A stretch of 64,000 nt of DNA from Mytilus trossulus (taxonomy: Eukaryota). Below, piece after piece: positions 3,021-62,741 of the stretch. Location: assembly GCF_036588685.1 (NCBI RefSeq), contig NC_086376.1, forward strand, positions 37,324,001-37,388,000, in the 5' to 3' direction. Within the stretch, counting starts at the first letter, position 1, and every line of letters begins with the position of its first letter. A model generated the notes under the pieces. It worked only from the letters and a program-made list of their open reading frames with translations, did no database searches and was not told the DNA's origin. The position numbers and the translations under genes were made by a program.

Positions 3021-4499
3021 ATATATTCTTTGGTTTACATGTTGTTACGGCTATTATAATACTAATGTGTATTAGTGGTAAGTGTTTTTTTCTGTTTTTT
3101 TCTTCTTTTTTTTTTGTATTCCTGTCACAGAGTGTTGTCCTTTAAATCGATATCTTTTTTTAGCATTAATATATAAGCTGTAAGATTTGACTAGCAATAA
3201 AATCGGGTTCAATCAACCATTTTTTCTTAAAACGTCCTATACCAAGTCAGAAAAATGGCAGTTGTTATCAAGTAGTTCCTTTCTATGTAAGTTGGCGTTT
3301 GTTTTTGTTACTCTTTAGTGTTTCTGTTGTTCCGTTGTGATGGTTGATGTCTTTCCCTTGGTTGATGTTGTAATCCGGATTTGTTTTCTCAGCAGTAAAC
3401 GTCTGTTGCATTTCTTGGATTTGTTTAATTGTATATTAACTTAAGCTTTCAACTTTATTAATGTCATTGAATTTATGGATCATTTCAATACAAAACTAGA
3501 AGTGTCTGACTCAGATACTTTCAGTTTTATCAGATATTCTGTATAATTATTAGTATAAGTATAAGTAAGTTTTTAATTTCGTTTTAATTAAGACACCAAA
3601 CGTCGTTATCACATTTTCTTCTGTTGTTAAATCCTCGATCTAAATGTGTTAAATCCTACAATGAGTATTTACATAATTATATCATTTGTCTAAGTGCAAT
3701 AAACGTTCAGTTTTGTGAATATGGGCATATCCAAATGACATTTCCTTAGTTTTATGTAGGAGCTATCAAAGTAAAAGAAAAAGAAGGTTCTAGTACTCGA
3801 TTCAACTATCTTTCAATCTTTTTGTCAGATTAGTTTGTACATTTGTATGAATGTGTTAGTCAGTTGTGTTGTATATGTCTTTGATATATGTTTATCCAGT
3901 TTATACTACTGCATCCCAATCATTGTCACATCAACCTAGTATGTCTATTATGTCTATTTAAGTTGATTTTTCAATTTTGGCACAGAACTATAATAAAAAC
4001 TGGCATAAAATTGAGAAGACCACCAATGGGTCTACAACACAGCGCAAAAATCCAACACCCAGGAGGCCTGTTTCAGCTGTCCTGTAAACAATAATGTTTA
4101 TTAGTTCAGTGATAATAGACGTCATACTAAACTCCAAACCATATTAATGAACTAAAACTACAAGACTAAGATAAGCAAACAACCGGGAGGTTTAGGTAGC
4201 TACAAAACAAGGTTTATTCACCAATTTCTGTAGAATATTTTAAAAAGTTTGCCTTGGCGTTTATTTTTTTGGTTATGGTTTTTGACTTTGACGAAGATTC
4301 AGTTTTTCGTATTAGATCAATTTAAGAGTCTAAAGTAGTAAACCAGTGTTCTTTTGTACATTAATCACGATAAACATAATTTACTTCCGCACTGGGCTTG
4401 ACAATATAACATATCTTTGAATTACCATTCAACATTATATCTAAAAAGCATAGTATTATGATGTCTTTTTTTTTCAATTGAGTCAATCGTTATTAAAGG

Positions 4500-5430
4500 T
4501 ATCAAACTAGTCAAAACATTTACTAAATTTTATCATCGGTATCAAGACATCATTCGTAAATATAGCTCAACATGCAGACTTCTTATACGTTCAGGTATTT
4601 CAAATCCAATTTTTTTATGGAAATATTCTTTATAAAGCACAAAGGTGTCAGTATTCACCTCAGAAACTTACAAAACCTTTGAATAGACTTATTAAGAAGG
4701 GATATAATTACGATACTGTTGTCAAGTCATCAAAGATTGCATATGTTGGCGTCAATATCGAGTCACTGATAAGATCTTTGCGTCGGAACTAAACACATTT
4801 ATTCTAAAAACAGTTTTTGGTATGACACGGGTTATGTTCTTCTCATATATGTTATGATGGTATGATACTAAACCCCTAACGGGAAGGATTGTGCCTGATG
4901 TTCATATGATGAAATCATAATCTTTCAGTCAGTTTAATTGAAGTCAGGAGCTGGCATGTCAGTTAACTGCTAGTAGTCTGTTGTTATTTATGTATTATTG
5001 TCATTTTGTTTATTTTCTTTGGTTACATCTTCTGACATCAGACTCGGACTTCTCTTGAACTGAATTTTAATGTGCGTATTGTAATGCGTTTACTTTTCTT
5101 CATTGGTTAGAGGTATAGGGGGAGGGTTGAGATCTCACAAACATGTTTATCCCCGCCGCATTTTTGCGCCTGTCCCAAGTCAGGAGCCTCTGGCCTTTGT
5201 TAGTCTTGTATTATTTTTATTTTAGTTTCTTGTGTACAATTTGGAAATTAGTATGGCGTTCATTATCACTGAACTAGTATATATTTGTTTAGGGGCCAGC
5301 TGAAGAACGCCTCCGGGTGCGGGAATTTCTCGCTACATTGAAGACCTGTTGGTGACCTTCTGCTGTTGTGTTTTTTTTATTTGGTCGGGTTGTTGTCTCT
5401 TTGACACATTCCCCATTTCCATTCTCATTT
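4500..5430 (+). mobile_element. 3' fragment of an RT retroelement (Penelope-like): end of ORF plus 3' UTR
   Basis: Encodes KLVKTFTKFYHRY...; near-identical in inverted orientation to 57137-58070. Confidence 0.75.
5105..5195 (+). ncRNA. Twister ribozyme-like motif, P5 permutation (L1 TAA mutated to TAT)
   Basis: GGGG-GAGGG...TAT-CCCC-GCC-[GCA TTTT TGC]-G-CCTG-TCCCAAGT-CAGG, closed by GGTTAGAGG/CCTCTGGCC. Confidence 0.7.
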
Positions 5431-5449
5431 TATCATGCTTATAATTTGA

Positions 5450-6425: not shown

Positions 6426-6469
6426 GCGTCACTGATGAGTCTTATGTAGACGAAACGCGCGTCTGGCGT
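6426..6469 (+). ncRNA. Minimal type I hammerhead ribozyme
   Basis: Stem I GCGTCA/TGGCGT; CTGATGA; stem II GTCT-TATGT-AGAC; GAAA; palindromic stem III ACGCGCGT; GTC cleavage triplet ending at 6463. Confidence 0.85.
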
Positions 6470-6940: not shown

Positions 6941-9900
6941 ACAAGATAATCCATCTTTTGTCTTGTGAATCGAGTTTCAACATTTTATGTTGATGTTCAT
7001 GCTGGGTTTTTTTTTGTGGTTTTTTTTATATATAGATAAGACCGTTGGTTTTCCCGTTTGAATAGTTTAACACTAATTTTGGGGTCCTTTATAGCTTGTT
7101 ACTCGGTGTGAGCCAAAGCTCCGTATTGAAGCCCGTACATTGACATGTAATGGTTTACTTTTATAAATTGTTATTTGGATGGAGAGTTGTCTCATTTGCA
7201 CTCATACCTAATCTTACTATATCTCATAAGTAGATTAAAAACGATTTTGCTGGTTAATAGATATAGCAATAAACATTTCGCCCATAATTCTACATTCAAG
7301 TGATTACATTATTCAAGTTTCAAGATTCTGCAGTTTGCGGTTGTTGGTAATGAACTAGACATTAAGTATTGGCACACGCATGTACGTTAATCAGGAGAAA
7401 TAATATTTCTATCTTTTTTGTTGTACGTGGGGATAAAAAAAAGTATGCTGTCCAAAATAAATGCAAACAAACTTCTTACATCTCAAATTGCAGTATTTTT
7501 TAAATGGCTTAAAGCAATACAACAATGAAGACCACATACTATCTAAAAATCCTAATATAAATCAGAAATAAACTACCGAGAAAATGACAATAGTAAAATG
7601 CTTGATTTGTTTTATTGACATATGTTTTCGGTTGTTGGACATGTCACTCCACCGTCGGCATTGCTATGGGTATGAACTGTGTTCTTCTTCCCGCCAACTG
7701 TTTCTATTTTCTTTTTTATATAAAGCATACTTAAAACAAGGGATTCAAATTTTGGTGATCACATCTATGTACCCAGTTATAGTACGTTTTACAAACAACA
7801 CCTTCATGGTTAGATTTGCCGTTATGGGATATCTGTGGCACAGCTGATAAAAATACATGTAGTATGGAGTTCCTGTTTCACTAGACGCGCCTGTTGTGAT
7901 TGTCATATCATGAAATTAGCCGGTGGAAAGTCATAATTACGTCATTAACGAGGAAATGAGGACAGGATAATTGTAATGAAAAATTGCACAATACCACGAT
8001 CATCTGTGAGTGACCTAAGGATGATGGCTTTAATATGTCAAAGAGGTGATTTGATATGAATTGTTAGCAATCCTGTTGATATTTGAAATATCCGTAGACA
8101 TTTCATTTTATCAAAACTCGGCATTTCATTTACGGATAACATATGATTATACAATATGCATATACACACTTGTTGACGAAGATAAAATATCGTATTGAAC
8201 ATTTTATTTTTGCCAAAATCGTTGCTCTTTATATTAACAAATGTCGTATCGACATGCTTAGTGACATTGCAACTGACAATTATACCTAAATTCAGCGTAA
8301 TAATTATATTTAAGCCTATATCAAGTTAAAAACATTCGCTTTTTCAGCGTCAGAAACCCATACGTTTCTATCGTAAGACAAGGGAAATTAAGTATAACAA
8401 TATGGTAAAAAGTTTTATAACTACGTGAACCTTGATTTAGAACATGACTTATATTTACATTATGTATCAAAATTGGTCATCGTACCTTTCACAACCTATA
8501 TCAATCTTGATTATTTATTTCATATAGATTCTTGTCATTTTTTGTATCTGAATATTAAGTAGTTAATCATACAGTACTTAAACTATTTGAAAACAAAGAC
8601 CCCTTCAAATAAGAACGGCGTTACTTCAGACTTTTTCATCCAGTTTCGCTCCTTTTAGACGTTGAAGCGATTCCCTTTGTGTTTTAAAACTGAAAACCCA
8701 TCTTATTTTCGCAGATACTTTTACTGACCCATTTTGCGGCGATTCAATTTCGCGATTGTAAATTTTACTTGATGAAGATAAATAAGGAAAATTTCAAGTT
8801 TTACATATTCTGGACGATTTATATTCGCATTTGTTTTCTTCTCGCCAAAGTTGCGAAAAGAAGTTGGTATAGAGTATAATGAATGGGGTTATGAGTGTTA
8901 ACAAAGTAAAACTACTGTTGTTTGTATGTATCCGTAACGTATTATATCCAGTGCTATTTGACTATATTTGATTCTGCTTTTGTCGTTTGATTGTTACCAT
9001 CATGATTGATTATTATATCACTGTTGGTCAAAGATACAGAGACGATGCTGTATATCAATGAAATTAAATATCCACACCCGCGCTTTTTTTTATACTTCAG
9101 ATCAACAGAAACAGGTCAAACAAAACCCTGTGAAAGCTAGAGATGTAAAAATACGTTAAAACATTAGAATCTATATAATATAAAGAGACCTAAATACAAT
9201 AGTCAATTTATCCAATGCTTGCGGAAGATGGAACATTAGTTATTTCATAATTTATTGACGAAGCATGTAAGATAACTAAGTAAAAACACCGATTTCATAT
9301 TAAATCTAGCATAAACAGAAGTTTGAAGTTTCTTAAAGTTGATTATACCTTGATTTCAATTTATTTTATATATACAATAAAATCATCATAGATACCAGGA
9401 TTGAAAATTTGTATTTGCGCTAAATGCGCGTTTACTTTATATTTTTTAAATTAAATAAATTTCAATACACCCATTTATTTTAGAAGAGAGAATGTGTTAA
9501 GAAGCACTTCATGTGTGAATGTAATTTTGGAGTTATTAGTGGAATTATGGACCTTAAAATTGTGGGTGGTAGTTTATTCAAATCTTCAACCGTTTTTTGC
9601 ATTGAAGATGATTGTACTTTTGTTAATGGGCAGATATTGTTCTAAACTAACTTTTAATGATTTCATTAGAATGGATTATTAATTTATCGTTTTGTAAGGT
9701 TGCCTGTTTAGATCATGTAGCATTTTAGGAACACTTTTAGTGGTGTGATATCTGTTGCAGGCATATAATGCAGATTTTCTTTGCATATGTTCACATCTGA
9801 ATATATCATTTGTGTTGTCGTTTGTTTTTGTTGAATTTTAATGTTTCTGTTGTTTCGTTGATTTTCTCTTATAATAGTTGATGCGTTTCCCTCAGTTTTG

Positions 9901-20271: not shown

Positions 20272-21193
20272 AATCAAGAGGCTGTCACAAAGACAGCAAA
20301 CGGGATTTATTAACATTTATTTGTGTCCTGGCAATATCACAAGAACCATTACTGATGAATGGTAAAAGTGAAAATCGTCAATATCAAATTTGACCTCCAT
20401 TTTGTAGTCAGTATCAACATATTAAAATTTGAAAAGCTTAGATTGAATGGTTCATGAGTAAACGCAACAACATGAATGGAAACGCCATTTTTCAATCTTT
20501 CAAGAACCATAACTCCTGAATGGTAAAAGTCAAAATCGTCATTATTGAACTTGATCTTCATTTTGCATCAGTAACAATATATTAAAATTTAGGAAGCTTT
20601 GGTAGAACAGTTTATGCGAAAAAGCACGGACACAACTGGAAACTCAATTTTTCAATCTTTCAAGAACCATAACTCCTGAATGGTAAAAGTCAAAATCGTC
20701 ATTATTGAACTTGACCTTCATTTAGTTGTCAGTAACAACATATTTAAGTTTTAAAAGCTTTGGTTGTACGGTTCATGAGTTAATGCACAGACACAACTGG
20801 AAACTCAATTTTTCAATCTTTCAAGAACCATAACACCTGAACGATAAAAGTCAAAATCGTCATTATTGAACTTGACCTTCATTTAGTTGTCAGTAACAAC
20901 ATATTAAAATTTTAAAAGCTTTGGTTGAACGGTTCATGAGTTAATGCACAGACACAACTGGAAACTCCATTTTTCAATCTTTCAAGAACCATAACTCCTG
21001 AACGGTAATAGTCAAATTCGCCACTATTGAACTTGACCTTCATTTAATTGTCAGTAACAACATATTAAAATTTTAAAATCTTTAATTGAACGGTTCATGA
21101 GTTAATGCACAGACATTTGATTGCCGCCCGCCCTGCCCTTGTACATCCCCAAATCAATAACCGACATTTTTGTCACAAAAATCCGGTTAAAAA
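20272..21193. mobile_element. Helentron-associated (HINE-like) element with about 4-5 tandem 160-161-bp repeats
   Basis: Starts CAAGAG, ends ATCCGGTTAAAAA. The unit marker TTCAATCTTTCAAGAACCATAAC occurs at 20491, 20651, 20812 and 20973. Confidence 0.7.
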
Positions 21194-23297: not shown

Positions 23298-23442
23298 GGG
23301 GCCCTTTATAGCTTGTTGTTCGGTGTGAGCCAAGGCTCCGTGTTGAAGGCCGTACTTTAACCTATAATGGTTTAATTTTTAAATTGTTATTTGGATGGAG
23401 AGTTGTCTCATTGGCACTCACACCACATCTTCCTATATCTAT
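23298..23442 (+). repeat. Short retroelement 3'-end repeat, subfamily 2 (other copies about 7081-7222 and 23897-24036)
   Basis: GGGGCCCTTTATAG...TTGAAGGCCGTAC...GTTGTCTCATTGGCA..CACCACATCTT recurs across the window. Confidence 0.75.
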
Positions 23443-24057
23443 GAAAAAATGTAGCTTAAGTGCAATAAAGACAATTTTGACCTATGCAGTTCAGAAGTTA
23501 TAGTTCTCGATTGATCTAAAAGTTATGCTTCATATTGTTTCCCTGTTGTAAATTGAGGACTGTTCAACCAATCTTTTTTCAAAATTGATTATGTTGTTTT
23601 ACATGGCATAATAGTAATAGAGGACCGTCAATTTTATTTGTTATTTTCATTTTTGCAATTCAGGATGTTTCATGTTGTTTCACAATGACTTGATAACTGT
23701 TGAACCAATGCATTCCAGCATTTAACACAATAATAGAAGAAGTGGTATTACCTAAAAGGCTCTCTTGTATCAAATCATCAGAAAACAGATTTTTTCTAGT
23801 TTACTCCATGGCCCTAGAGAAGCTGTATTGATATTTCCCTGAATCAATTAAACATAAGAACAGATTTAGTAAACATATTTCCTTCAGACTGAACAGACCT
23901 TTATAGCTTGCTGTTTGGTGTCAGACAAGGCTCTGTGTTGAAGACTGTACTTTGACCTAAAATGGTAAACTTTTACAAATTATTGCTTGGATGGAGAGTT
24001 GTCTCATTGGCACCCATACCACATTTCTTATATCTATATAATGAATGTTTTCCTCAC

Positions 24058-30103: not shown

Positions 30104-32986
30104 TGAAGTTAAATCTACCTCAGTGGTGCCATCATTGTTATTTAATTGTCACTGTTAATTTATTTTTCATAAATATACATTATTTTGTAAATTGATTATT
30201 TTTTTAGTAAAATATCTATTTGATTACAGAATTATTTAATTTGCTTTATTTTGCAATCCTTACAGAATTTCACCTCTATGACACAATTAATGCAGACTTG
30301 GCCTAAAGTCCAATGACATATTTGATGCAGATTTGGCCTAAAGTCAATTTTTTTTATCAGCAGATCTCTTTATCAATAATCCCAACAGAACTATCAAATA
30401 TATGAACAAAGCTGACAACGACCAGAAACAAAGGATTAGATCTATACTAGCCTAAAGTAAAATTTTACACTGAATTAATAAATATTTTAGAAAACCTAGA
30501 CAAAAACTTTCAAAAGGGCAGTCACCATCTATAAGGGGTCAAGCATTTAGCACTATACATGACTTTAGCAAGAAGCAATTAAAACATGAATGACTCTGCA
30601 TCAATAATAGAGTAATCCAACTAAATTATTTTTTGTTCAACAGCACCTTTTCCCTATCCCTGACTAATTGTGTTTCAAAAACCCTGGAGCATTTAAACAT
30701 GTTATTTTAAACTGAAGATGTTTTATTTGTCTGGTTTTGGTGTCTATTAATAAGAGTAAACAAAAATCTTCAAGGAAAGCAAATTCTGGAGACTGAACTG
30801 CTTGTCTGAAGTTATCACAATAATATCAAGAACAAAATGAAAGAACATTTTGAAAGAAAGCTAACGTAATGAAGTCCCCACATAATCAGCACAACAATAT
30901 TTTACAATTCCTACTCCTTAGAATAAGGTTCGACTAAGGTTCCACATTTCAGATATTTCTCATTATAGAACTTGTTATATAACTGTTTTGATAAATGAAT
31001 ATCTTCAATATTGAAGAGAACAGGACCAAATAAATTAAAAAGCATTATCCTGATATAACAAAGTGTTGATTGACAGACTGACAGACAGAATGACTGACTG
31101 GTAGACATGACAAGAACATAATTCCTCCTCCTCCCCCACAATTTCCTGCAGTTTGGTAACAACAATTATCAAGGTTGCTTTATCATAAATTGTGCTTATA
31201 GGTTTTTCATATTTCACAACCTTTAAATGTCAATTATTTAACCTATGTAAAAGCTACATGGATAAATAATTTATCTAAATATACATGCCTAGTTAAACTT
31301 TGACAGACCAAACCTGTTTGAACTTCATGTGTGCAGTTGACCATAAGTCCATAAACATATATAGAAATCAATAAAAACTATATATAAATATTTTTTTCTA
31401 AAAAAACAATCATATGTTCTACAAATAGTATGTTATAAAACTATGTATGAATATACATAACATTAGCACTTGTCTAAGAAATCTAAATATGAACACATAA
31501 AAGATTACGTTATATGACCAATGTCCTTAGAAGGCCCAATAAGGACCCTTGGAAATTTGGTTAGGAATCTCCATAATCCTTCTGTATTTCAAATCTACTC
31601 TTCTTTATTCTAAATGCTTCAGATATATTTGAGTAGAGCAGGATACAGTCACTTATCATCAAATGCATCTATTAATTCACATAAATTATAAGTTTTTAAC
31701 AGATTGGTAACTTTATCTTTGTAATTAAAAGATATCAGCATTTCTGATTTTTTTTAAATTGCATCCTCTTCCTGGAGTGCTTTTATTCAATATACTATAT
31801 AAACTGTGAAAAAAGATAGGAAGAAAGAATTTTTCAGATGTAACTGCAAGTTTGCAACACAATGCCAAAATTCAAACTTAGGATTCAATAATTCCCATAT
31901 CGTAAAAAAATAGCCACAGCAGTGGACACAATTTAAACAGGGATTTTCCTTAACCTTGTCCAACAACCATTTCTGGGACCACAAGAGGTCAGACTAAAAG
32001 AGAGACAAAGAAAAGCCAATATGACCCTAAAATATTTGTTTTACAAGGAGCATAATAAATATGATAAAAGGACATTTTAGTTCAGGTGAATAAAACAGCA
32101 ACTTTGGACATAGGTCAGACAAAAATAAATGTTGTTTACTCAGAAAAAAATGCAAGTGTCCACTTCGATCCTTTAAAATAAATATCCCAAATAAAAATAT
32201 AAAAAGATGTGGGAAAAAGAAAAGTGCAATCAAATCCTATAATTTGTTTACATAATCATTTGACTTTGAAATGATAGTTCAAGGTCATCTTCCTTCAAAT
32301 TTAAGTATGTCCATCCCTCATTGGTAAATAAAGTGTCACAATACAACTAATTTAGCCACTTAATTGGTAATAATTGTCAGATAAACAAAAATATGGATAT
32401 TTCTAGTTATAAGAGATATATGACAAAAACCATGCAGACTTCCGTGTTTGAACATAATTTTTCATATTTTATGGTTAACAAATTTGCTATATAATAGAAT
32501 AATATTGCTTACAATTAAGGGTTACCTAACGTGATGATAAAAACACTTCAAACGCTCTATCTAAAAGTATAATCAGGAAAAGGGTTTGGTCATATAAATT
32601 GATTTTATTTCTCTCTAAACAAATTTCTACATAAACACTTATACTAATATATAGGAAGATTCTGAGGATGAACATTCTGAGGATGAACACGTTACCATTT
32701 CCCATGATGCTTTATATTCACTCTCACAATATTTATTAGACAGATTGTAAACAACTGGATAATCATCATAATATAAGTATAAATCTGTTATTAAATAAGT
32801 ACAAAACAAATACCCTACAGAAATTACGTCTCATGTCAATAGCGAAGCATTAAAATTGATAATCTGGTATCTAACCTGCCTTCATACAGTAATCCTAAAA
32901 GGATGCATTCAAGTCCACTTTCATAACCAAAAAGTATCTATATTAACTATTTCTGTTAATATTTTGTATATACTTTTTGTTTTTTC

Positions 32987-33133
32987 GGGGCCTTTTATAG
33001 CTGACTATGCGATATGGGTTTTGCTGATTGTTGAAGGCCGTATGGTGACCTATAGCTGTTAATGTCTGTGTCATTTTGGTCTTTTGTGGATAGTTGTCTC
33101 ATTGGCAATCATACCACATCTTCTTTTTTATAT
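32987..33133 (+). repeat. Short retroelement 3'-end repeat, subfamily 1 (same end as the 56041 element; remnants at about 13790, 26085, 26365, 40510, 58964)
   Basis: Matches the reverse complement of 56041-56176. Confidence 0.75.
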
Positions 33134-38874: not shown

Positions 38875-40506
38875 AACAAGGGGCTCTCAAGAGCCTGAAT
38901 CGCTCACCTTAATTCTTTTGGTTAAATCTCTCATCAATGATTATTTTGGCTTTTCAATTTATTTAAATGTTCTTTGGATCGTCCTATTTTCTTCAAAAGC
39001 CAAACAAAATAATCATTTTCTCCTATGTTCTATTTTAGCCATAGGAGCTGTTTCTTGACATACAAGGAAATAAAATATAAAATGTATACTAGAAACTCTG
39101 AAACTCATTTAGCCTAAGTTTGGCTGAAATTGATACAGCAGTTTCAAAGGAGAAGATTTTTTAAAGTAAGTCAACATGATGAACAAATTGTGAAAAAAGT
39201 CTTTAAAGGGCAATAACTCCTTAAGGGGTCAATTGACAATTTTGGTCATGTTGACTTATTTGTAGATCTTACTTTGCTGAACATTATTGCTGTTACAGTT
39301 TATCTCTTATCTATAATAATATTCAAGATAATAAACAAAAACAGCAAAATTTCCTTAAAATTATAAATTCAGGGGCAGCAACCCAACAACAGGTTGTCTG
39401 ATTCATCTGACAATTTCAGGGCAGATAGATCTTAACCTGATAAACATAATAACCCCATGTCAGATTTGCTCTAAATGCTTTGGTTTTTGAGTTATAAGCC
39501 AAAAACTGCATTTGACCCCTATGTTCTATTTTTAGCAATGGCGACCATGTTTGTTGATAGATCAAAACTTCGGATACAATTTACAAACAAGAAACCCTAA
39601 GGAACATTCAGTTAAAGTTTAGAAGTATTTGGCCCAGTAGTTTCAGAGGAAAAGATTTTTGTAAAAGATTACTAAGATAATTTACGAAAAAATGGTTAAA
39701 AATTGACTATAATGGGCAATAACTCCTAAAGGGGTCAACTGACCATTTCCGTCATGTTGACTTATTTGTAAATCTTACTTTGCTGAACATTATTGCTGTT
39801 TACAGTTTATCTCTTATCTATAATAATATTCAAGATAATAACCAAAAACAGCAAAATTTCCTTAAAATTACCAATTCAGGGGCAGCAACCCAACAACGGG
39901 TTGTCTGATTCATCTGAAAATTTCAGGGCAGATAGATCTTGACCTGATAAACAATATTACCCACAAGTCAGATTTGCTCTAAATGCTTTGGTTTTTGAGT
40001 TATAAGCCAAAAACTGCATTTGACCCCTATGTTCTATTTTTAGCAATGGCGACCATGTTTGTTGATAGATCAAAACTTCGGATACAATTTACAAACTAGA
40101 TACCCTAAGGAACATTCAGTTAAAGTTTGGAAGTATTTGGCCCAGTAGTTTCAGAGGAGAAGATTTTTGTAAAAGATTACTAAGATTTACGAAAATGGTT
40201 AAAAATTGACTATAAAGGGCAATAACTCCTAAAGGGGTCAACTGACCATTTCCGTCATGTTGACTAATTTGTAAATCTTACTTTGCTGAACATTATTGCT
40301 GTTTACAGTTTATCTCTATCTATAATAATATTCAAGATAATAACCAAAAACAGCAAAATTTCCTTAAAATTACCAATTCAGGGGCAGCAACCCAACAACC
40401 GGTTGTCTGATTCATCTGAAAATTTCAGGGCAGATAGATCTTGACCTGATAAACAATATTACCCACATGTCAGATTTGCTTTGCTTTGGGCCAGGTGAGC
40501 TAAAAA
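38875..40506. mobile_element. Helentron-associated (HINE-like) element with about 3 tandem copies of a unit of about 505 bp
   Basis: AACAAG start, sub-terminal inverted repeat GCTCACCT/AGGTGAGC, TAAAAA end. AGGGGCAGCAACCCAACAAC at 39371, about 39878 and 40380. Confidence 0.75.
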
Positions 40507-43800: not shown

Positions 43801-44856
43801 TGGTTTCCTGTTTGGTTTCATGTCACGTAAACAGTGAATCAAAATGTATTATTTTTTTCTCGAAAAACTCAATTGTTCCATTCATACTATTCTAACACCA
43901 ACACACCCCACAAAATAAAAGTTAAAATTTTAGAACTTATAAAAAAGGATACAAAAAGAAACCAAAGGCCGAATACCAAATTATGGTCCATATCAAAGAA
44001 CCCCAATTATTCAATTTTTGATGAAATCAAACAAAGTGTAATTTTGGACCCCTATTTGGACCAATTTGAAAACTAGGCCAATAATAAAAAATCTAAGTAC
44101 ATTTTTAGATTCAGCATATCAAAGAACCCCAGAGATTCAATTTTTGTTCAAATCAAACTAAGTTTAATTTTGGACCCTTTGGACCTTAATGTAGACCAAT
44201 TTGAAAACGGGACCAAAAATTAAAAATCTACATACACAGTTAGATTCAGCATATCAAAGAACCCAAATTATTCAATTTTTGATGAAATCAAACAAAGTTT
44301 AGTTTTGGAACCCTTTATTCCCAAACTGTTGGGACCAAAACTCCCAAAATCAATCCCAACCTTTCATTTGTGTTCATAAACCTTGTGTTTAAATTTCATT
44401 GATTTCTATTCACTTATACTAAAGTTATTGTGCAAAAACCAAGAATAATGCTTATTTTGGTCCTTTTTTGGCCCCTTTTTCCTAAACAGTTAAAACAAAA
44501 AATCCCAAAATCAATCCCAACCTTCCTTTTGTGGTCAAAAACCTTGTGTCAAAATTTCATAGATTTCTATTTACTTAAACTAAAGTTATAGTGTGAAAAC
44601 CAAAAAAAAGCTTATTTGGGCCCTTTTTGGCCCCTTATTCCCAAAATATTGGGACCAAAACTCCCAAAATCAATCCCAGCCTTCCTATTGTGCTCATAAA
44701 CCTTGTGTTATAATTTCATAGATTTCTATTATTTTTTACTAAAGTTAGAGTTGGAAAACTAAAAGTATTCAGACGACGACGATTACGACGACGACGACGC
44801 CTACGTGATAGCAATATATGACGAAAATTTTTTCAAATTTTGCGGTCATATAAAAA
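40855..44856. mobile_element. Second HINE-like element with internal minisatellites, split by an insertion at 41990-43989
   Basis: ACAAGAG start. TTCTTGCTATTGCACAATA array of about 35 bp (41380-41765). GCATATCAAAGAA..CC repeats continue across the insertion. (GAC)n and TAAAAA end. Confidence 0.65.
41990..43989. mobile_element. 2.0-kb non-autonomous TIR DNA transposon nested in a HINE (Sola1-like target duplication)
   Basis: TIR GACCATAATTTG.TATT.GGC at both ends. ATAT is duplicated from the host motif CAGCATATCAAAG. No convincing ORF. Confidence 0.7.
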
Positions 44857-46934: not shown

Positions 46935-47670
46935 TCTCCTTAGCTCAGCCTGATATGACAGCAGAGGTTGAACCCTGAACCACTAGGGCAAGTTCGGACA
47001 TAATATTCAAGCTTAATTCTGTCTGAATTTGGATTGTAAAAGTGTAAAGCAGGGGTTTTTCGCGGGTGTGTTTACTTTTGCTTATTTTGGCGGATAAGGG
47101 GAAATCGCAAATATAGTGCAAAACTGTGACATGGGATATTTCTTCTTGAAACTTTTCAAAAAATTTTAAATTTCAGAAATTTGAAGAATATAATCTTGTA
47201 CAGTGTAGTACAAGTTTAGAGACATCTGTTCACTTAGACACAAGTTATTGACTGAAAACTAGAACAATATTTGCTTTTTGCCTTTTTTGGCCACTAATTC
47301 CTGCATGTTTGGTGCAATTACCCCCAAACTCAATCCCAGCCTTCCCTTTGTGATATGGAACCTTGTGGTACAATTTGAGAGAGATACATACACTTACACA
47401 CTAGTTATAGTCCAGAAACTACAAAAATGCTTGTTTTGGCCCCTTTTGGAACCTTAATTCCTAAATTGTTGGTACCATAACCCCCATAATCAATCCCAAC
47501 CTTTTTTTGTTTGTTGTATTGAACCTTTTTGGTAAGATTTCATAGAGATCCATACATTTTAACTAAAGTCATTGACTGGAAACCAAATATGTCTTCTGAT
47601 AACGATATAGACGACTACAAAGCTGACATCATAGCCATATACGAACTCACAAAAATTTTGCAGTTAGACA
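46935..47670. mobile_element. Diverged copy of the 40855 HINE family
   Basis: Shares GCAGAGGTTGAACCCTGAAC and the CAATCCCA.CCTT repeats. Confidence 0.55.
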
Positions 47671-47939: not shown

Positions 47940-48380
47940 AACTAGAGGCTCTAAAGTGCCTGTGTGGCTCACCTAAGCTTGGTCTATATTAATATTCAAG
48001 ATAAAAACCAAAAACAGCAAAATTTCCTTAAAATAACCTATTAAGGGGCAGCAACCCAACAACGGGTTGTCCGATTTATCTGAAAATTTCCCCCGTGTCA
48101 GATTTGCTCTAAATGCTTTGGTTTATGAGTTATAAGCAAAAAACTGCATTTTACCCCTATGTTCTATTTTTAGCCATGGCGGCCATCTTGGTTGGTTGGC
48201 CGAGTCACAGGACACATTTTTAAACTAGATACCCCAATGATGATTGTGGCCAAGTTTGGTTTAATTTGGCCCAGTAGTTTCAGTGGAGAAGATTTTTGTA
48301 AAAATTAACGACCCGGACAACGGACGCCAAGTGATGAGAAAAGCTCACTCTTGGCACTTTGGGCCAGGTGAGCTTAAAAT
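47940..48380. mobile_element. Short copy of the 38875 HINE family
   Basis: GCTCACCT ... GGGCCAGGTGAGC ends, with the shared internal unit. Confidence 0.7.
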
Positions 48381-56040: not shown

Positions 56041-56938
56041 TATAAAAAAGAAGATGTGGTATGGTTGCCAATGCGACAAGAAAGAAAATAATGACACACA
56101 TTAACAATTACAGGTCACCGTACGGCCTTCAACAATGAGCAAATCCCATACCGCATATAGTCAGCTATAAAAACCCTGATAAGACACTGTAAAACAATTC
56201 AAGCGAGAAAACTAACGGCCTTATTTATGTAAAAAAATGAACGAAAAACAAAGACGTAACACATAAACAAACGACAACCACTGAATTACAGGCTCCTGAC
56301 TTGGGACAGGCACATACATAAATAATGTGGCGGGGTTAAACATGTTAGCGGGATCCCAACCCTCCCCCTAACCTGGGACAGTGGTATAACAGTACAACAT
56401 AAGAACGAACTATAAAAATCAGTTGAAAAAGGCTTAACTCATCAGATAGACAAAAAATAAAAGTGGACGTGGCCGGGTACTTATACATCCCGACACAAAA
56501 AGACACAATGAACAGATTTGAGAGTACTCGCAGTTATCTGACAGCTAGTTCAAAGCCATTAACAACTAATAAAAAAATCATGCCTCTAAGACTAAGCAAT
56601 CAATCCATACACATCCAACATACAATGGATTTAGTGTAAAGACGTCATAAACAGCCAGAGAAAAACATGACCTTGTGCAATGCCAATTTACAGGTATCGA
56701 CAGATTGTAGATCCATGAAAATGTATATGTATATAACATACTAGTAATATTTAGTTAGCTTTTAATCTACTGATAACGAAATCAATATTTATACCAATAA
56801 AAACAATATTCAATGATCTTATTACAGTGTTGAATAGGTAACCTTTTAGAATAAGTTTATTTAAAGGAGCACGGTTAACAACATTTCCGTAAAAATGAGG
56901 ATGTGCTATCCCGTTTGAAATAAGTTTTCTACGTTTAT
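56041..56938 (-). mobile_element. 3' fragment of a second Penelope-like RT subfamily, in HLCS intron 1
   Basis: The peptide GIAHPHFYGNV...PLNKLILKGY..NTVIRSL is homologous to the end of ORF 57777-58196. A distinct 3' UTR follows. Confidence 0.7.
56278..56384 (-). ncRNA. Twister ribozyme, P5 permutation, core motifs intact
   Basis: Minus strand reads CAGG-TTA-GGGG-GAGGG-TT-GGGATCCC-GCT-AACATGTT-TAA-CCCC-GCC-ACAT[loop]ATGT-G-CCTG-TCCCAAGT-CAGG-AG-CCTG, with outer stem CCACTG/CAGTGG. Predicted U^A cleavage between 56338 and 56337. Confidence 0.8.
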
Positions 56939-57136: not shown

Positions 57137-58223
57137 TATAAAATTGAGAATGGAAATGGGGAATGTGTCAAAGAGACAACAACCCGACCAAATAAAAAAA
57201 CAACAGCAGAAGGTCCCCAACAGGTCTTCAATGTAGCAAGATATTCCCGCACCTGGAGGCGTCCTTCAGCTGGCCCCTAAACAAATATATACCAGTTCGG
57301 TGATATTGAACACCATACTAATTTCCAAATTGTACACAAGAAACTAAAATTAAAATAATACAAGACTAACAAAGGCCAGAGGCTCCTGACTTGGGACATG
57401 CCAAAAATGGGGCGGGGTTAAACATGTTTGTGAGTTCTCAACCCTCCCATTTATACCTCTACCCAATGTAGAAAAGTAAACGCATAACAATACACACATT
57501 AAAATTCAGTTCAGGAGAAGTCCGAGTCTGATGTAAGAAGAAGTAACCAAAGAAAATAAACAAAATGACAATAATACATAAATACAACAGACTACTAGCA
57601 GTTAACTGACATGCCAACTTCAGACTTCTATTAAACTGACTAAAAGATTATGATTTCATCATATGAGCATCAGGCACAATCCTTCCCGTTAGGGGTTTAG
57701 TATCATACCATCATAAGATATATGAGAATAACATAACCCGTGTCATACCAACAACTGTTTTTTTTAATAAATGTGTTTAGTTCGGACGCAAAGACCCTAT
57801 AAGTGAATCAATATTAACGTCAAAATATGCAATCTTTAATGACCTGACAACAGTATCGTAACTATATCCCTTCTTAATAAGTCTATTCAAAGGTTTTGTT
57901 ATTTTCTGAGGTGAATACTGACACCTTTGTGCTTTATAAAGAATATTTCCATAAAAAATTGGATGTGAAATACCTGCACGTATAAGAAGTCTGCATGTTG
58001 AGCTATATTTACGAATGATGTCCTTATACCGATGATAAAATTTAGTACATGTTTTGACTAGTTTGTGATATCGAAAACTCTGGTGTAATAATTTTTCAGT
58101 AATACATAAATTTCTCTCGTTAAAATCTAAAACATTGTTACATACACGAGCCAATCGTACAAGTTGGGATATATAAACACCGTAAGATGGTGACAATGGA
58201 ACGTCACCATCTAAAAATGGATA
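57137..58223 (-). mobile_element. 5'-truncated Penelope-like RT element (RT C-terminal region plus 3' UTR), in HLCS intron 1
   Basis: YPFLDGDVPLSPSYGVYISQLVRLARVC...EKLLHQ is typical of the PLE RT thumb region. No C-terminal GIY-YIG. Same family as 4500-5430. Confidence 0.75.
57374..57463 (-). ncRNA. Degenerate twister copy
   Basis: GAGGG...TAACCCCGCC...TCCCAAGTCAGG retained. P2, P4 and one palindrome carry mismatches. Confidence 0.6.
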
Positions 58224-59306: not shown

Positions 59307-59415
59307 TAGTCCAAATAATAATGACGTCTGGCAAGGCTATTTTAATTTTTTTCTGGGACGCCCTCCCAGAAAAAAATTAAAATAGTCTTGCCAGATGTCA
59401 TAATTATTAGGACTA
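59307..59415. mobile_element. Palindromic MITE, TAG...CTA ends with a perfect 9-bp TSD (AcademH- or Mutator-like)
   Basis: 109-bp hairpin. ATGTTTACC at 59298-59306 and 59416-59424. Confidence 0.8.
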
Positions 59416-59739: not shown

Positions 59740-59817
59740 ATTATGTTATGATAATGATTTGATAATGTTATGATAATGATTATGTTATGATAATGATTAT
59801 GATAATGTTTTGATAAT
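59740..59817. repeat. (TATGATAATGAT)n-like simple repeat at the LINE 5' junction
   Basis: Directly visible repeated TGATAATG. Confidence 0.7.
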
Positions 59818-62741
59818 GGGTGATTTAAACTTCAATATGCTTGATGACAATAAAAGCTCAACTTTAAATGATTCTTGTGATATTTTCTGTATTAAAAACA
59901 TTATTAATAAAGCAACATGTTATAATAGAAATTCGAAACCAACTCTTCTTGATGTAATTTTAACTAATCAAGAAAATAAATGTGGTAAAAGATGTAATTT
60001 TGGATGTGGCTTAAGTGATGTTCACAACCTGATTGGGGTTCAAATAAAATGTGAACGACCTAATATCAAACCAAAATACAGAAAATGTAGAAGTTTTAAA
60101 AATTTTGATGTAAATGATTTTTTATCTGATTTGAATGAGTTAAATTGGGATGTTGACCCTCATAATAACATAAATACTGAGTATGAAAACTTCAACAAGA
60201 AGTTTATTGAAACAGCAAATAAACATGCACCCTTTAAAGAAAGAAAATACTATCTAAACAGATACCATACATGAACAAACAGTTAAAATCTGCAATTTAT
60301 AAAAAGAAAATGCTTTACAACAAATTTCAAAACAGCAAGACATGGGATGCATACAAAACACAAAGAAATTTTGTCACTAAACTTAAAAAACAATCCATAA
60401 ATAGATACTTCATAGAACGCTGCACAGGTGGTCCTAAGTCGAAAGATTTCTGGCCAACAGTTAAGCCATTCCTTACCAACAAAGGATGCACCAGCCAAAA
60501 AGAAACCATACTGCAGGAAAACAACAAAATCATCACGAACCAACAAGAAATATCTGAAATTTTTAATGACTTTTTTGTTAATGTTGCAAAAAACATTGGT
60601 GACAACAACATACAGGTGAATGACAAACACCCAAGTATAGAAGCTATAAGTAATAAATACTCAAACGGGTCAAAATCAAATAAACTTATTTTTCAGCCTA
60701 TAAATGAGGAATTTGTTTCTAAAAGAATTGGTAAAATAAATGTTAAAAAGGCTACTGGTATAGATGGTATATCACCAAAAATTTTACACGCTGCTAAACC
60801 TGTAGTGATTAAACCTATCACACAGCTTGTAAATTTATCATTATCCACTTCCATTTTTCCAGACTCATTAAAAATTGCCCAAGTGGCACCTGTTCACAAA
60901 AAAAATAGTGTTCTTGAAAAGGGTAATTATAGACCAGTTAGTGTTTTACCTGCTATATCTAAAATTTTTGAAACAGCCATAGAAAATCAACTCACTAAAT
61001 ACTTTGATGATATTTTCGACCATTTTCTTGCGGCATTTCGAGCTGGTTATGGCTGCCGGTCAACATTACTCAAAATTTTGGAAGATTGGAAAAAGGCACT
61101 GGATAATAATAAATATTTAGCGGCTATATTAATGGACCTAAGTAAAGCCTTTGACTGTCTTCCACATGATTTACTTCTTTTGAAATTGGAAAATATGGCC
61201 TTAGTCCATCTGCTCTGGAATTACTCAAAAGCTATCTGACTGCAAGAAAACAGTGTGTAAAAATAGGCCAGAGTATCAGTCAAATGCAAGATATATATAA
61301 AGGTGTTCCTCAGGGATCTATACTAGGCCCTGTATTATTTAATGTTTTTATAAATGATATTTTTCTTTTTGTCAAACACTGTGATTTATACAACTATGCT
61401 GATGATAACACCCTCTCAAAAACAGGTACTACTTTGGAATCAGTTATTAAACCCTTAGAGGAAGACAGTAATTCCCTAATCTCATGGTTCTCTTTCAACA
61501 AAATGCAGGCAAACCCAGAAAAATTCCAGGCAATTTCCATAGGTAAAAAAACACACACTCAAAATATTACTTTCAACCTAAATGGATTCAACATAAAATG
61601 TGACGACGAAGTGAAACTTCTCGGTGTAACAATAGACTTTAAACTGGATTTTAACACTCACATCTCAAATATTTGCAAAAAAGCTGCACGACAACTAAAC
61701 GTTCTAAAAAGAATTGGCACTCATCTCACCAGACTTTCAAAACTTACAATATACCACTCATTTATCATGTCAAACCTCAGCTACTGTCCTCTTACATGGC
61801 ACTTCTGCAGTGAACAAAACACAAAGAAAATAGAAAAAATACAAGAAAGAGCACTCAGATTTATTTATGACGACTACACAAATTCTTACAATACACTTCT
61901 TGAACAATCTAAGCTACCAGCACTAAAAATCAGAAGATTGAGAACCATGGCATTAGAGACATATAAAATAATAAATAAATCAAGTCCAGAATTCCTACAT
62001 AATTTAGTAAATATTAAAGAAAATTCATATAACTTCAGGTACAAAGGCATAGCAGATATACCACGGCCAAAAACAACAAGGTATGGTAATAAAAACTTTA
62101 GTTATGAGGCAGCAAAACTCTGGAACTCCTTGCCAAATGAGGCAAGGAGCTTATCAACTTTTGGCCAGTTCAAAAATTTTATCTCCACCTGGTGTTTTTC
62201 AGAAAAATGTACATGCAGTTCTTGTAAATAATGTACTTACTTGCTGCCCCATAACTTGATCTCGAAGCCTGCTGTTTATTTGGTTTTTTTAATGTTTTAT
62301 TTTTTTGCAGTTATTTTTATTTTTTATTTAGCCATTTATTTCTTTTGCTTATGCATTACCTTTGCTATAGCTGCATGCAGTCTTTTGTTTGTGCTTAAAG
62401 TGTTTAAAAGTTTGCATGTGCTACTGTTATATAAATACTATGTGCTACTGTATATGTGCTGATATTAGACATTTGTTTTAATCTATCTTGCAATGCTTAG
62501 CTTTTATTCTGCATGTGCTATCTATGTATTAATATATATATGTGCTATCTATGTATTAATATATATATATGTGCTGTCTATTTGCATATTTGTGTTGTAT
62601 GTGTGTCTGATGTTATTACATGTATGTTTTGTTTATTAATATCAGTCGGTTAAAGAGCTCTTAAGAGCTCATGTTCATTGTTATTATGTATATATATGCA
62701 ACCCGACTTTAAATAAAGATTACTTTACTTTACTTTACTTT
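59810..62741 (+). mobile_element. 5'-truncated CR1-group LINE; ORF2 (APE endonuclease end plus RT) broken by two frameshifts
   Basis: IMGDLN, LLDVILTN, LSDVH (endonuclease). NYRPVSVL, MDLSKAFD, GVPQGSILGP, YADD (RT). 3' AATAAA followed by a (TACTT)n tail. Confidence 0.93.

What the first reader, a model, noticed from the sequence alone, without database searches (positions are those of the whole stretch)
32987..33057. Unrecognised covarying RNA fold shared by three diverged repeat subfamilies, downstream of the twister
Seen: subfamily 1 (32987; 56176-56111 minus), subfamily 2 (23298; 7081; 23897) and subfamily 3 (5292; 57277-57204 minus) share GGGGCC-[P1]-loop-[P2]-[hairpin]-TTGAAG-[P2']-..ACC-[P1']. 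P1 is TATAG/CTATA in subfamilies 1 and 2 but AGCTGAAG(G)/CCTTCTGCT in subfamily 3. P2 is CGGT/GCCG versus C(G/A)GGT/ACCTG. The hairpin is ATGGG.TTTGCTCAT, GAGCC-AA-GGCTC or GCGGGA-ATT-TCTCGC. Stems change sequence while the unpaired TTGAAG and GGGGCC are largely kept, which is the signature of a functional RNA. It does not match hammerhead, HDV, twister, pistol, hatchet or hairpin consensus as I recall them. Inference: a new ribozyme, or an RT-binding/packaging element.
Basis: partly seen in the sequence, partly recalled or inferred. Interest (0 to 1): 0.8.

Follow-up and report, generated by a model that had tools for sequence, protein, structure and literature searches.

The report
Conserved RNA stem in Naiad retroelement tails
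The flagged 70 bases are a real, evolutionarily maintained RNA hairpin near the 3' end of very abundant Penelope-like (Naiad) jumping genes of a mussel-like genome; it most likely tells the element's reverse transcriptase where to bind and start copying, and nothing suggests it is a new ribozyme.

Summary
The flagged stretch (32987-33062) is a 5'-truncated copy of a repeat with thousands of genomic copies.

The repeats are not stand-alone elements. They are the last ~130-160 nt of Naiad-type Penelope-like retroelements, which have an N-terminal GIY-YIG domain, an RT and TGA-only in-frame stops. Their 3'UTR runs SECIS-like element, twister-like motif, this module, then a ~60-75 nt tail.

Ten lineages, from this genome and from marine metagenome contigs, share the architecture: GGGGCC, P1, P1b, P2, a 4-6 bp hairpin, a 3' bulge ending UUGAAG, then the returning strands.
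- On an alignment not fitted to the structure, 83% of cells pair, against 31-51% for slid registers, and 9 of 16 pairs show compensatory change.
- G·U outnumbers A·C 21 to 2, so the sense strand folds.
- There is no match to any Rfam ribozyme or tRNA.
- RNA-seq shows no cleavage ends.

Best reading (inferred): an RT-recognition and initiation-positioning element, analogous to the internal initiation stem-loop of the Poseidon PLE. A ribozyme is unsupported.

Earlier scan notes describe the twister in Naiad tails on other DNA.

The parts
32987..33062 (+). Flagged module copy (family 1 type), in a copy 5'-truncated at 32986
   Evidence: cmsearch R1 65.1 bits, E 2.9e-18. Genome copies continue upstream of this point.
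33063..33133 (+). 3' tail of the same copy: small hairpin TTGTCTCATTGGCAA, an AC-rich run, then the end ...TTTTTTATAT
   Evidence: Sharp common 3' boundary in 30 genomic copies, with no poly(A).
5292..5369 (+). Module copy (family 2 type), identical to the commonest genomic sequence of its family
   Evidence: R1 74.9 bits; 12 identical copies; MFE -28.8 kcal/mol, z -2.0.
5370..5431 (+). Tail of the family 2 copy; the element ends at 5431
   Evidence: 2335 RNA-seq reads diverge into unrelated AT-rich sequence just after 5431.
57200..57277 (-). Module copy (family 2 type)
   Evidence: R1 67.2 bits.
56101..56176 (-). Module copy (family 1b type, with a 2-nt insertion between P1b and P2)
   Evidence: R1 46.7 bits.
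23298..23374 (+). Module copy (family 3 type), identical to the metagenome full-length elements L090 and L091
   Evidence: R1 71.2 bits.
7081..7157 (+). Module copy (family 3 type, decayed)
   Evidence: R1 47 bits.
23896..23969 (+). Module copy (family 3 type, decayed and 5'-truncated)
   Evidence: R1 36 bits.
56294..56370 (-). Twister-like motif ~120 nt upstream of the module in the same 3'UTR (context only, not evaluated in depth here)
   Evidence: Rfam twister-P1 partial match, 16.5 bits against a gathering score of 67.2; inverted-repeat pairs I18 and I19; earlier scan notes.
56590..56656 (-). SECIS-like element in the same 3'UTR (others at 4844-4908 + and 57660-57724 -)
   Evidence: Rfam SECIS_1 at 27.3, 32.3 and 33.4 bits against a gathering score of 35.
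57777..58196 (-). C-terminal end of the Naiad RT ORF, whose 3'UTR carries the module at 57200-57277
   Evidence: 139-aa ORF. It is 57-63% identical to the ORF ends of family 1 copies and ~92% identical by eye to the ORF end of L094.

Best explanation
The module is a cis-acting, sense-strand RNA structure in the 3'UTR of one subclade of Naiad-type Penelope-like retroelements. It is a ~70-nt irregular hairpin: P1, P1b, P2 and an apical 4-6 bp stem, an 8-12 nt bulge on the 3' side ending in UUGAAG, and an invariant single-stranded GGGGCC in front. It always starts 127-160 nt before the element's 3' terminus, ahead of a conserved tail.

Most likely mechanism (inferred, not shown): the element's GIY-YIG/RT protein binds this structure. 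The helices would supply the shape, and GGGGCC and UUGAAG the base-specific contacts. Binding would place the enzyme so that target-primed reverse transcription starts at a fixed point at the end of the tail, regardless of where the transcript really ends.

Shown here: the fold, its covariation, the strand that folds, its position, and the element class that hosts it.

Inferred: protein binding and positioning of initiation.
For: Host element:
- Copies continue upstream into a PLE RT ORF that ends without an endonuclease.
- Full-length relatives have an N-terminal GIY-YIG domain: Pfam PF01541 at aa 135-223 of the 1004-aa ORF of L139. The N-terminal region of L090 aligns to it at E 4e-38.
- The in-frame stops in L090 are all TGA, and SECIS-like elements lie in the 3'UTR, as published for Naiads (PMC8557442).

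Structure:
- 83% of cells paired on the unfitted alignment against at most 51% for slid registers, with 9 of 16 compensatory pairs.
- 86.5% paired and 17 of 21 compensatory pairs on the fitted 10-lineage alignment.
- An apical hairpin of 4-6 bp sits at the same place in all nine lineages, with different sequences.
- z-scores of -3.85, -2.83, -2.50 and -2.03 in four lineages.

Strand: 21 G·U cells against 2 A·C cells, and the sense-strand MFE is lower than the antisense MFE in 9 of 9 lineages.

Breadth: the module occurs in a 100/99-supported RT clade and in L115, whose RT is 52% identical.

Position and ends:
- The distance to a sharp 3' end without poly(A) is constant.
- Flanks are AT-rich, as for Naiad (TA)n targets (PMC8557442).

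Precedent: the Poseidon PLE protein needs an RNA motif and initiates reverse transcription internally in an AC-rich stem-loop, and hammerhead cleavage is dispensable (PMC11167929).

Parallel case: the sister Naiad clade carries a different long hairpin with compensatory changes at the equivalent place.
Against: - There is no direct evidence of protein binding or of a role in reverse transcription.
- Three lineages, including the apparently young family 3, fold no better than shuffled sequence, and their MFE is sometimes another fold.
- Only ten lineages were available, falling into two main groups, so many compensatory differences may trace back to few events.
- The fitted alignment leans towards the structure.
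- The RNA-seq run covers both orientations equally and its depth follows copy number. It therefore mostly reports passive transcription of dead copies, reportedly inside a host intron, and says nothing about the active RNA.
- In Poseidon the protein-binding region lies at the pLTR-ORF junction, so the analogy is positional only.
Confidence: 0.55

Rival explanations
1. The module is a new self-cleaving ribozyme, alone or together with the tail. It would, for example, trim read-through transcripts.
For: A conserved structure with invariant unpaired nucleotides lies next to another ribozyme-like motif, in a retroelement class that usually carries ribozymes. No known family matches it.
Against: - No ribozyme family is hit even at E up to 10 on short stretches.
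- The architecture is a single irregular hairpin without a multi-helix junction or a predicted pseudoknot.
- RNA-seq depth is continuous through 5292-5369, and no place shows a pile-up of read starts or ends.
- Cleavage inside the module would detach the tail from the template.
Confidence: 0.04
2. The module is an RNA element with another post-transcriptional role for the element's mRNA. Candidates are stability, export, localisation, 3'-end formation, support of Sec recoding, or a folding partner or regulator of the upstream twister-like motif.
For: It is a sense-strand structure in a 3'UTR that also holds SECIS-like and twister-like elements. The palindromic GGCC within GGGGCC could mediate RNA-RNA contacts (sequence only).
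Against: - The position is fixed relative to the 3' terminus rather than to the SECIS or the twister: spacing to the 3' end is 127-160 nt, while the upstream spacers differ.
- L115 has the module in an otherwise different 3'UTR context.
- I found no conserved complement to GGGGCC or UUGAAG in the flanks when inspecting the sequences by eye.
Confidence: 0.17
3. The conservation acts at the DNA level. The module would be a promoter or regulatory part of the pseudo-LTR formed by tandem copies, or a structure of the plus-strand cDNA used in second-strand synthesis.
For: - PLE promoters lie in pLTRs (PMC8557442, PMC11167929).
- Contigs L094 and L096 begin with the module and tail and also end with the module region, which indicates head-to-tail copies.
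- GGGGCC and TTGAAG could be protein-binding sites on DNA.
Against: - Compensatory changes in 9-17 pairs are not expected for duplex-DNA binding sites.
- The 21:2 excess of G·U over A·C excludes the minus strand.
- G·T pairs are poorly tolerated in DNA helices (established knowledge).
Confidence: 0.1
4. There is no functional structure. The apparent covariation comes from shared ancestry among a few related tails, plus CpG decay in dead copies.
For: - There are only ten lineages in two main groups.
- Some 'compensatory' changes in single old copies can be explained by two CpG transitions (L048:2590-2672).
- z is near 0 in three lineages.
Against: - Slid-register controls keep the relatedness yet give 31-53% pairing and at most 9 double-change cells, against 83-86% and 19-39.
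- Representatives were the commonest genomic sequences or assembled contigs, not single decayed copies.
- Compensatory changes also occur within each group: for example UAUAG/CUAUA against UACAG/CUGUA, and AUGGGC/GCUCAU against AUGGAU/GUCCAU.
Confidence: 0.06

Closest known systems
RT-initiation stem-loop and protein-binding RNA region of the Poseidon Penelope-like element of Anolis (Frangieh et al. 2024, PMC11167929)
   Same: Both belong to the same retroelement class, with an RT sister to telomerase RT. Both are structured RNAs next to a small ribozyme and next to the point where genomic copies end. In both cases targets are AT-rich, copies lack poly(A), and the initiation point is set by the RNA rather than by homology to the target.
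   Different: - Poseidon has a C-terminal endonuclease and a hammerhead, and its motif lies at the pLTR-ORF junction, inside the start of the ORF.
- Here the element is a Naiad with an N-terminal endonuclease and a twister-like motif, and the module lies wholly in the 3'UTR.
- No sequence similarity is evident between the two.
- Binding and initiation are experimentally shown there and only inferred here.
3'UTR recognition structures of stringent-type non-LTR retrotransposons (R2 3'UTR; the UnaL2-type 3' stem-loop shared by LINE/SINE pairs)
   Same: All are conserved, covarying 3'-terminal RNA structures that an element's own RT recognises in order to start target-primed reverse transcription, and the copies end without poly(A).
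   Different: They belong to a different retroelement class and have a different fold. In those systems the structure lies at or very near the 3' end, whereas here a 60-75 nt conserved tail follows it.
Telomerase RNA protein-binding and template-boundary elements
   Same: The RT is the closest relative of TERT. A helix with flanking conserved single-stranded nucleotides, at a fixed distance from the site where copying starts or stops, is how TERT defines its template.
   Different: No sequence or fold homology was tested or seen. This is an analogy only.
Small self-cleaving ribozymes of retroelements (hammerhead in PLEs and retrozymes, HDV-like in R2/RTE, twister)
   Same: Both are compact conserved RNAs with invariant unpaired bases carried in retroelement untranslated regions.
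   Different: There is no match to any Rfam ribozyme model, no junction or pseudoknot architecture, and no cleavage signature in the reads.

Membership tests
Naiad-type Penelope-like element (host of the module) | GIY-YIG endonuclease N-terminal to the RT, and no endonuclease after the RT | tested here: met
   - PF01541 at aa 135-223 and RVT_1 at aa 750-853 of the 1004-aa ORF in L139.
- The N-terminal region of L090 aligns to L139 aa 144-424 at E 4e-38.
- ORFs of the module-bearing families stop ~130 aa after the ...SYGVYISQL... motif, with no further domain.
Naiad-type Penelope-like element (host of the module) | PLE-type RT | tested here: met
   Motifs YWLPKLHK, YLDDI and IYDKRDDF are invariant in a 15-protein alignment. 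There are 4280 relatives in the protein search. RVT_1 matches are only weak.
Naiad-type Penelope-like element (host of the module) | No canonical hammerhead; some families encode selenoproteins with a SECIS in the 3'UTR; AT/(TA)n-rich targets | tested here: met
   - No hammerhead hit in the two 3'UTRs scanned at E up to 10.
- All four in-frame stops of the L090 N-terminal region are TGA.
- SECIS_1 matches of 27-33 bits.
- AT-rich flanks follow the 3' end.
Known self-cleaving ribozyme families (hammerhead, HDV-like, twister, twister-sister, pistol, hatchet, hairpin, VS and others in Rfam 15) | Match of sequence and structure to the family covariance model | tested here: not met
   No Rfam match overlaps any module copy, either at gathering scores or at E up to 10.
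tRNA-derived SINE head / tRNA-like structure | Cloverleaf or A/B-box head at the 5' end of a short element | tested here: not met
   ARAGORN finds no tRNA in the window, and there is no Rfam tRNA match. GGGGCC is internal to the element: full copies continue upstream through the 3'UTR into the RT ORF.
Retroelement RT-recognition / initiation RNA element (R2 3'UTR, UnaL2 stem-loop, Poseidon PLE stem-loop) | Conserved, covarying sense-strand structure at a fixed place near the site where cDNA synthesis starts | tested here: met
   The distance to the 3' end is 127-160 nt in all lineages whose end is known.
Retroelement RT-recognition / initiation RNA element (R2 3'UTR, UnaL2 stem-loop, Poseidon PLE stem-loop) | Specific binding by the element's protein, and a requirement for target-primed reverse transcription | not testable with these tools
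   This needs purified protein with binding and TPRT assays.

The most novel reading that the evidence does not exclude
The module and the tail together form an internal initiation platform. The Naiad RT, sister to telomerase RT, would clamp onto the GGGGCC/UUGAAG-marked helix. It would then begin copying at a fixed distance downstream, inside a longer tandem, read-through or circularised transcript, much as TERT uses a template-boundary helix. That would make this the first defined RNA 'handle' of the most abundant PLE clade and a possible evolutionary link to telomerase RNA recognition.
Probability: 0.15. Interest if true: 0.8.

Novelty: new member of a known kind. Interest (0 to 1): 0.5.

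Why it matters
Naiads are the dominant Penelope-like elements in bivalves and many other invertebrates. Nothing is published on how their RNA is recognised, and they were described mainly by what they lack, namely the hammerhead.

A compact module supported by covariation, at a fixed distance from the cDNA start point, gives a concrete and mutable target for biochemical work of the kind just begun on Poseidon. Because PLE RTs are the closest relatives of telomerase RT, it also bears on how RNA-guided positioning of this RT lineage evolved.

Practically, the ~150-nt tails could be mistaken for SINEs or MITEs in mollusc repeat libraries. Recognising them as truncated Naiad 3' ends would improve annotation.

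Tried and rejected
- tRNA-derived SINE head with A/B boxes was my first idea. I rejected it because ARAGORN and Rfam find no tRNA and the element continues upstream into an RT ORF.
- HDV-like reading (GGGGCC as P1 at a cleaved 5' end): no conserved complement was seen by eye in the sequences, there is no Rfam hit, and only ~2 of 30 copies start exactly at GGGGCC.
- Hammerhead core: CUGAAGA occurs in family 2 only, not in families 1 and 3 (sequence).
- Pseudoknots or long-range pairings of GGGGCC or UUGAAG with the hairpin loop or the tail are not conserved across lineages (inspection of the sequences).
- The first covariance model, R1, mis-registered the apical hairpin of family 1 type rows, because MAFFT placed the gaps in the loop. 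I rebuilt it as R2. L151 and family 3 are still imperfect in A7, so the hairpin was also checked with an anchored script.
- The genome DNA search with the family 3 tail returned nothing, not even itself, because common words are skipped.
- No supplementary files are held for Craig et al. 2021.
- No paper in the library holds the tail motif.
- RNA-seq gave no information on strand or ends.
- I computed a majority consensus only for the ~150-nt non-coding tails, to define families. I built no consensus of any ORF or whole element, and all later analyses used real copies.

Full report
**What is at the coordinates**

The stretch 32987-33057 lies in a 148-nt repeat copy (32986-33133). The genome is 1.30 Gb in 541 contigs.

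In most genomic copies the sequence continues upstream of GGGGCC. The flagged copy is therefore 5'-truncated, and GGGGCC is not an element start. A 501-nt query further upstream is matched over its whole length at 96-97% by all 39 other listed genomic places.

**What the repeat is**

Upstream of the tails lie ORFs with Penelope-like RT motifs (YWLPKLHK, YLDDI, IYDKRDDF). These ORFs end about 130 aa after the SYGVYISQL motif, with no endonuclease behind them.

A protein word search found 4280 unnamed relatives. A scan of metagenome contigs returned 80 loci encoding relatives at 32-81% identity.
- One of them, L139, has an intact 1004-aa ORF with Pfam GIY-YIG at aa 135-223, N-terminal to the RT.
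- The N-terminal region of L090, a full-length relative that carries the family 3 tail, aligns to that region at E 4e-38.
- All four in-frame stops in that part of L090 are TGA.
- SECIS_1-like elements lie 100-140 nt behind the ORF ends.

This is the architecture published for Naiad PLEs: an N-terminal endonuclease, no canonical hammerhead, selenoprotein families with SECIS, (TA)n targets, and dominance in bivalves (PMC8557442). Earlier notes of this scan had reached the same identification for the twister-bearing tails; I checked it independently as described above.

The order in the 3'UTR is ORF stop, SECIS-like element, twister-like motif, spacer, module, tail. The twister-like motif gets only partial Rfam matches of 14-16.5 bits, against a gathering score of 67.

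Contigs L094 and L096 begin with the module and tail and also end with the module region. This indicates head-to-tail copies, as is usual for PLEs.

**The fold**

A plain MAFFT alignment of nine lineages is gap-free on both strands: from GGGGCC to the start of the apical hairpin, and from UUGAAG onward. Helices P1, P1b and P2 can therefore be scored with no freedom in the alignment.

On that alignment:
- 83.3% of 144 cells are standard pairs, against 31-51% when the 3' partners are slid by 1-3 columns.
- 9 of 16 pairs have changes on both sides, making 19 cells against 5-7 in the slid versions.
- The covariation score is 0.457 against at most 0.198, and no shuffle out of 500 reaches it.

An anchored table shows, for example:
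- P1: A-U/U-A, G-C/A-U and A-U/C-G.
- P2, second pair: C-G, A-U, G-U and G-C.
- An apical hairpin of 4-6 bp at the same position in all nine lineages with different sequences: AUGGGC/GCUCAU, AUGGAU/GUCCAU, GAGC/GCUC, GUGG/CCAC, GCGGGA/UCUCGC and GUGGG/CUCAC.

On a covariance-model alignment of ten lineages, 86.5% of cells pair and 17 of 21 pairs show compensatory change. That alignment is fitted to the structure and so leans towards it.

GGGGCC and the bulge ending in UUGAAG are nearly invariant. L133 has GAGGCC, L132 has GGGGCG, and L115 has GGGACC and UUAAAG.

G·U and U·G cells number 21 against 2 for A·C and C·A. The sense strand folds more stably than the antisense strand in all nine lineages. 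The folded molecule is therefore the sense strand.

Stability is uneven:
- z = -3.85 (L151), -2.83 (L095), -2.50 (L115), -2.03 (family 2) and -1.7 (a family 1 copy).
- z is near 0 for family 1b, family 3 and L126.
- For L132, L133 and family 1b the MFE is an alternative fold.

**Distribution**

A covariance model finds the module nine times in the window, seven of them strong hits, and 122 times in 330 kb of this genome's loci.

Among the metagenome Naiads, those that carry the module form a clade with 100/99 support in an RT tree. L115 also carries it, although it sits inside the sister clade.

The other members of that sister clade with enough downstream sequence lack the module. At the equivalent place they carry a different ~65-nt hairpin, with 4 compensatory pairs among four sequences. 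This fits clade-specific 3' recognition structures, with occasional exchange of 3' cassettes. That last point is inference.

**Ends and expression**

Genomic copies end sharply at ...TTTTTTATAT (family 1) or at 5431 (family 2), with no poly(A). Their 5' truncation points vary. The module starts 127-160 nt before the end in every lineage whose end is known.

An RNA-seq run with raw reads covers the family 2 copy in both orientations. Its depth rises towards the 3' end in parallel with DNA copy number. No place shows a pile-up of read starts or ends, and depth is continuous through the module. 2335 reads run off into unrelated AT-rich sequence at 5431.

This mostly reflects passive transcription of dead copies. 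By another first-reader note, the window lies in a host intron. The run gives no sign of cleavage in the module and no information about the active RNA.

**Interpretation**

No Rfam family, ribozyme or otherwise, and no tRNA matches the module.

The closest functional precedent is the Poseidon PLE of Anolis. Its purified protein needs a segment of the element's RNA and starts reverse transcription internally, in an AC-rich stem-loop. It does so without homology to the nicked AT-rich target and without needing hammerhead cleavage (PMC11167929).

In the Naiad tails, a structured module with two invariant single-stranded motifs is followed by a small conserved hairpin and an AC-rich run. These sit at a fixed distance from a sharp 3' end that lacks poly(A). 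I therefore rate an RT-recognition and initiation-positioning element as the most likely function (0.55).

The rivals, in order:
- other post-transcriptional roles, including cooperation with the twister-like motif (0.17);
- DNA-level or plus-strand cDNA roles (0.10);
- a phylogenetic artefact (0.06);
- a new ribozyme (0.04).

**Limits**
- Only ten lineages were available, in two main groups.
- No tree-aware covariation statistic was available.
- Cross-species material came only from anonymous marine metagenome contigs.

**Novelty**

I found no description of this structure in Craig et al. 2021, in Frangieh et al. 2024 or by searching the paper library. It is a new member of a known kind: retroelement 3' RNA recognition structures. 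It is of moderate interest to people working on PLEs and telomerase-related RTs.

Noticed in passing
window 6426-6469 (+): Type I hammerhead ribozyme match just under Rfam's gathering score (33.0 against 34 bits, E 2.4e-4), with an intact CUGAUGA...GAAA core. It probably belongs to a retrozyme or a canonical PLE.
   Followed up: no
L100:2658-2745, L105:3150-3237, L107:2684-2772, L112:4228-4316: The sister Naiad clade (RT ~53% identical) lacks the GGGGCC/UUGAAG module. At the equivalent 3'UTR position it has a different conserved ~65-nt hairpin (ACAAUAGU...GUGGCGGCCGUAAAACGUCUCCCCGUACAU...UAUUGU), with 4 compensatory pairs among 4 sequences.
   Followed up: partly
L090:632, 725, 758, 1619; window 4844-4908 (+), 57660-57724 (-), 56590-56656 (-): The module-bearing Naiads look like selenoprotein-encoding elements. 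Every in-frame stop in the GIY-YIG/linker region is TGA, and SECIS_1-like elements (27-33 bits against a gathering score of 35) follow the ORF.
   Followed up: partly
L115:4198-4266 compared with its RT (L115:2143-3414): L115 carries the module although its RT groups with the clade that has the other hairpin. This may be an exchange of a 3' cassette between Naiad lineages.
   Followed up: partly
window 59810-62231 (+): Three consecutive ORFs (154, 322 and 315 aa) look like a non-LTR (LINE-type) endonuclease/RT. They are unrelated to the Naiad elements.
   Followed up: no
window 59307-59415: A near-perfect 52-nt inverted repeat with a 5-nt loop (92% complementary) gives a weak mir-3146-like match of 33.5 bits against a gathering score of 96. 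It may be a MITE or a hairpin-forming repeat.
   Followed up: no
window 20332-21116, 39085-40480, 44295-44764: Tandem arrays with periods of ~161 nt, ~505 nt and ~160 nt (satellite-like). Diverged further copies lie at 47256-47508 and 47981-48316.
   Followed up: no
L094:1-136 and 4003-4088; L096:1-117 and 4003-4122: Metagenome contigs of full-length Naiads start with the module and tail and also end with the module region. This implies head-to-tail (pLTR-type) copies with a unit length of about 4.0 kb.
   Followed up: partly
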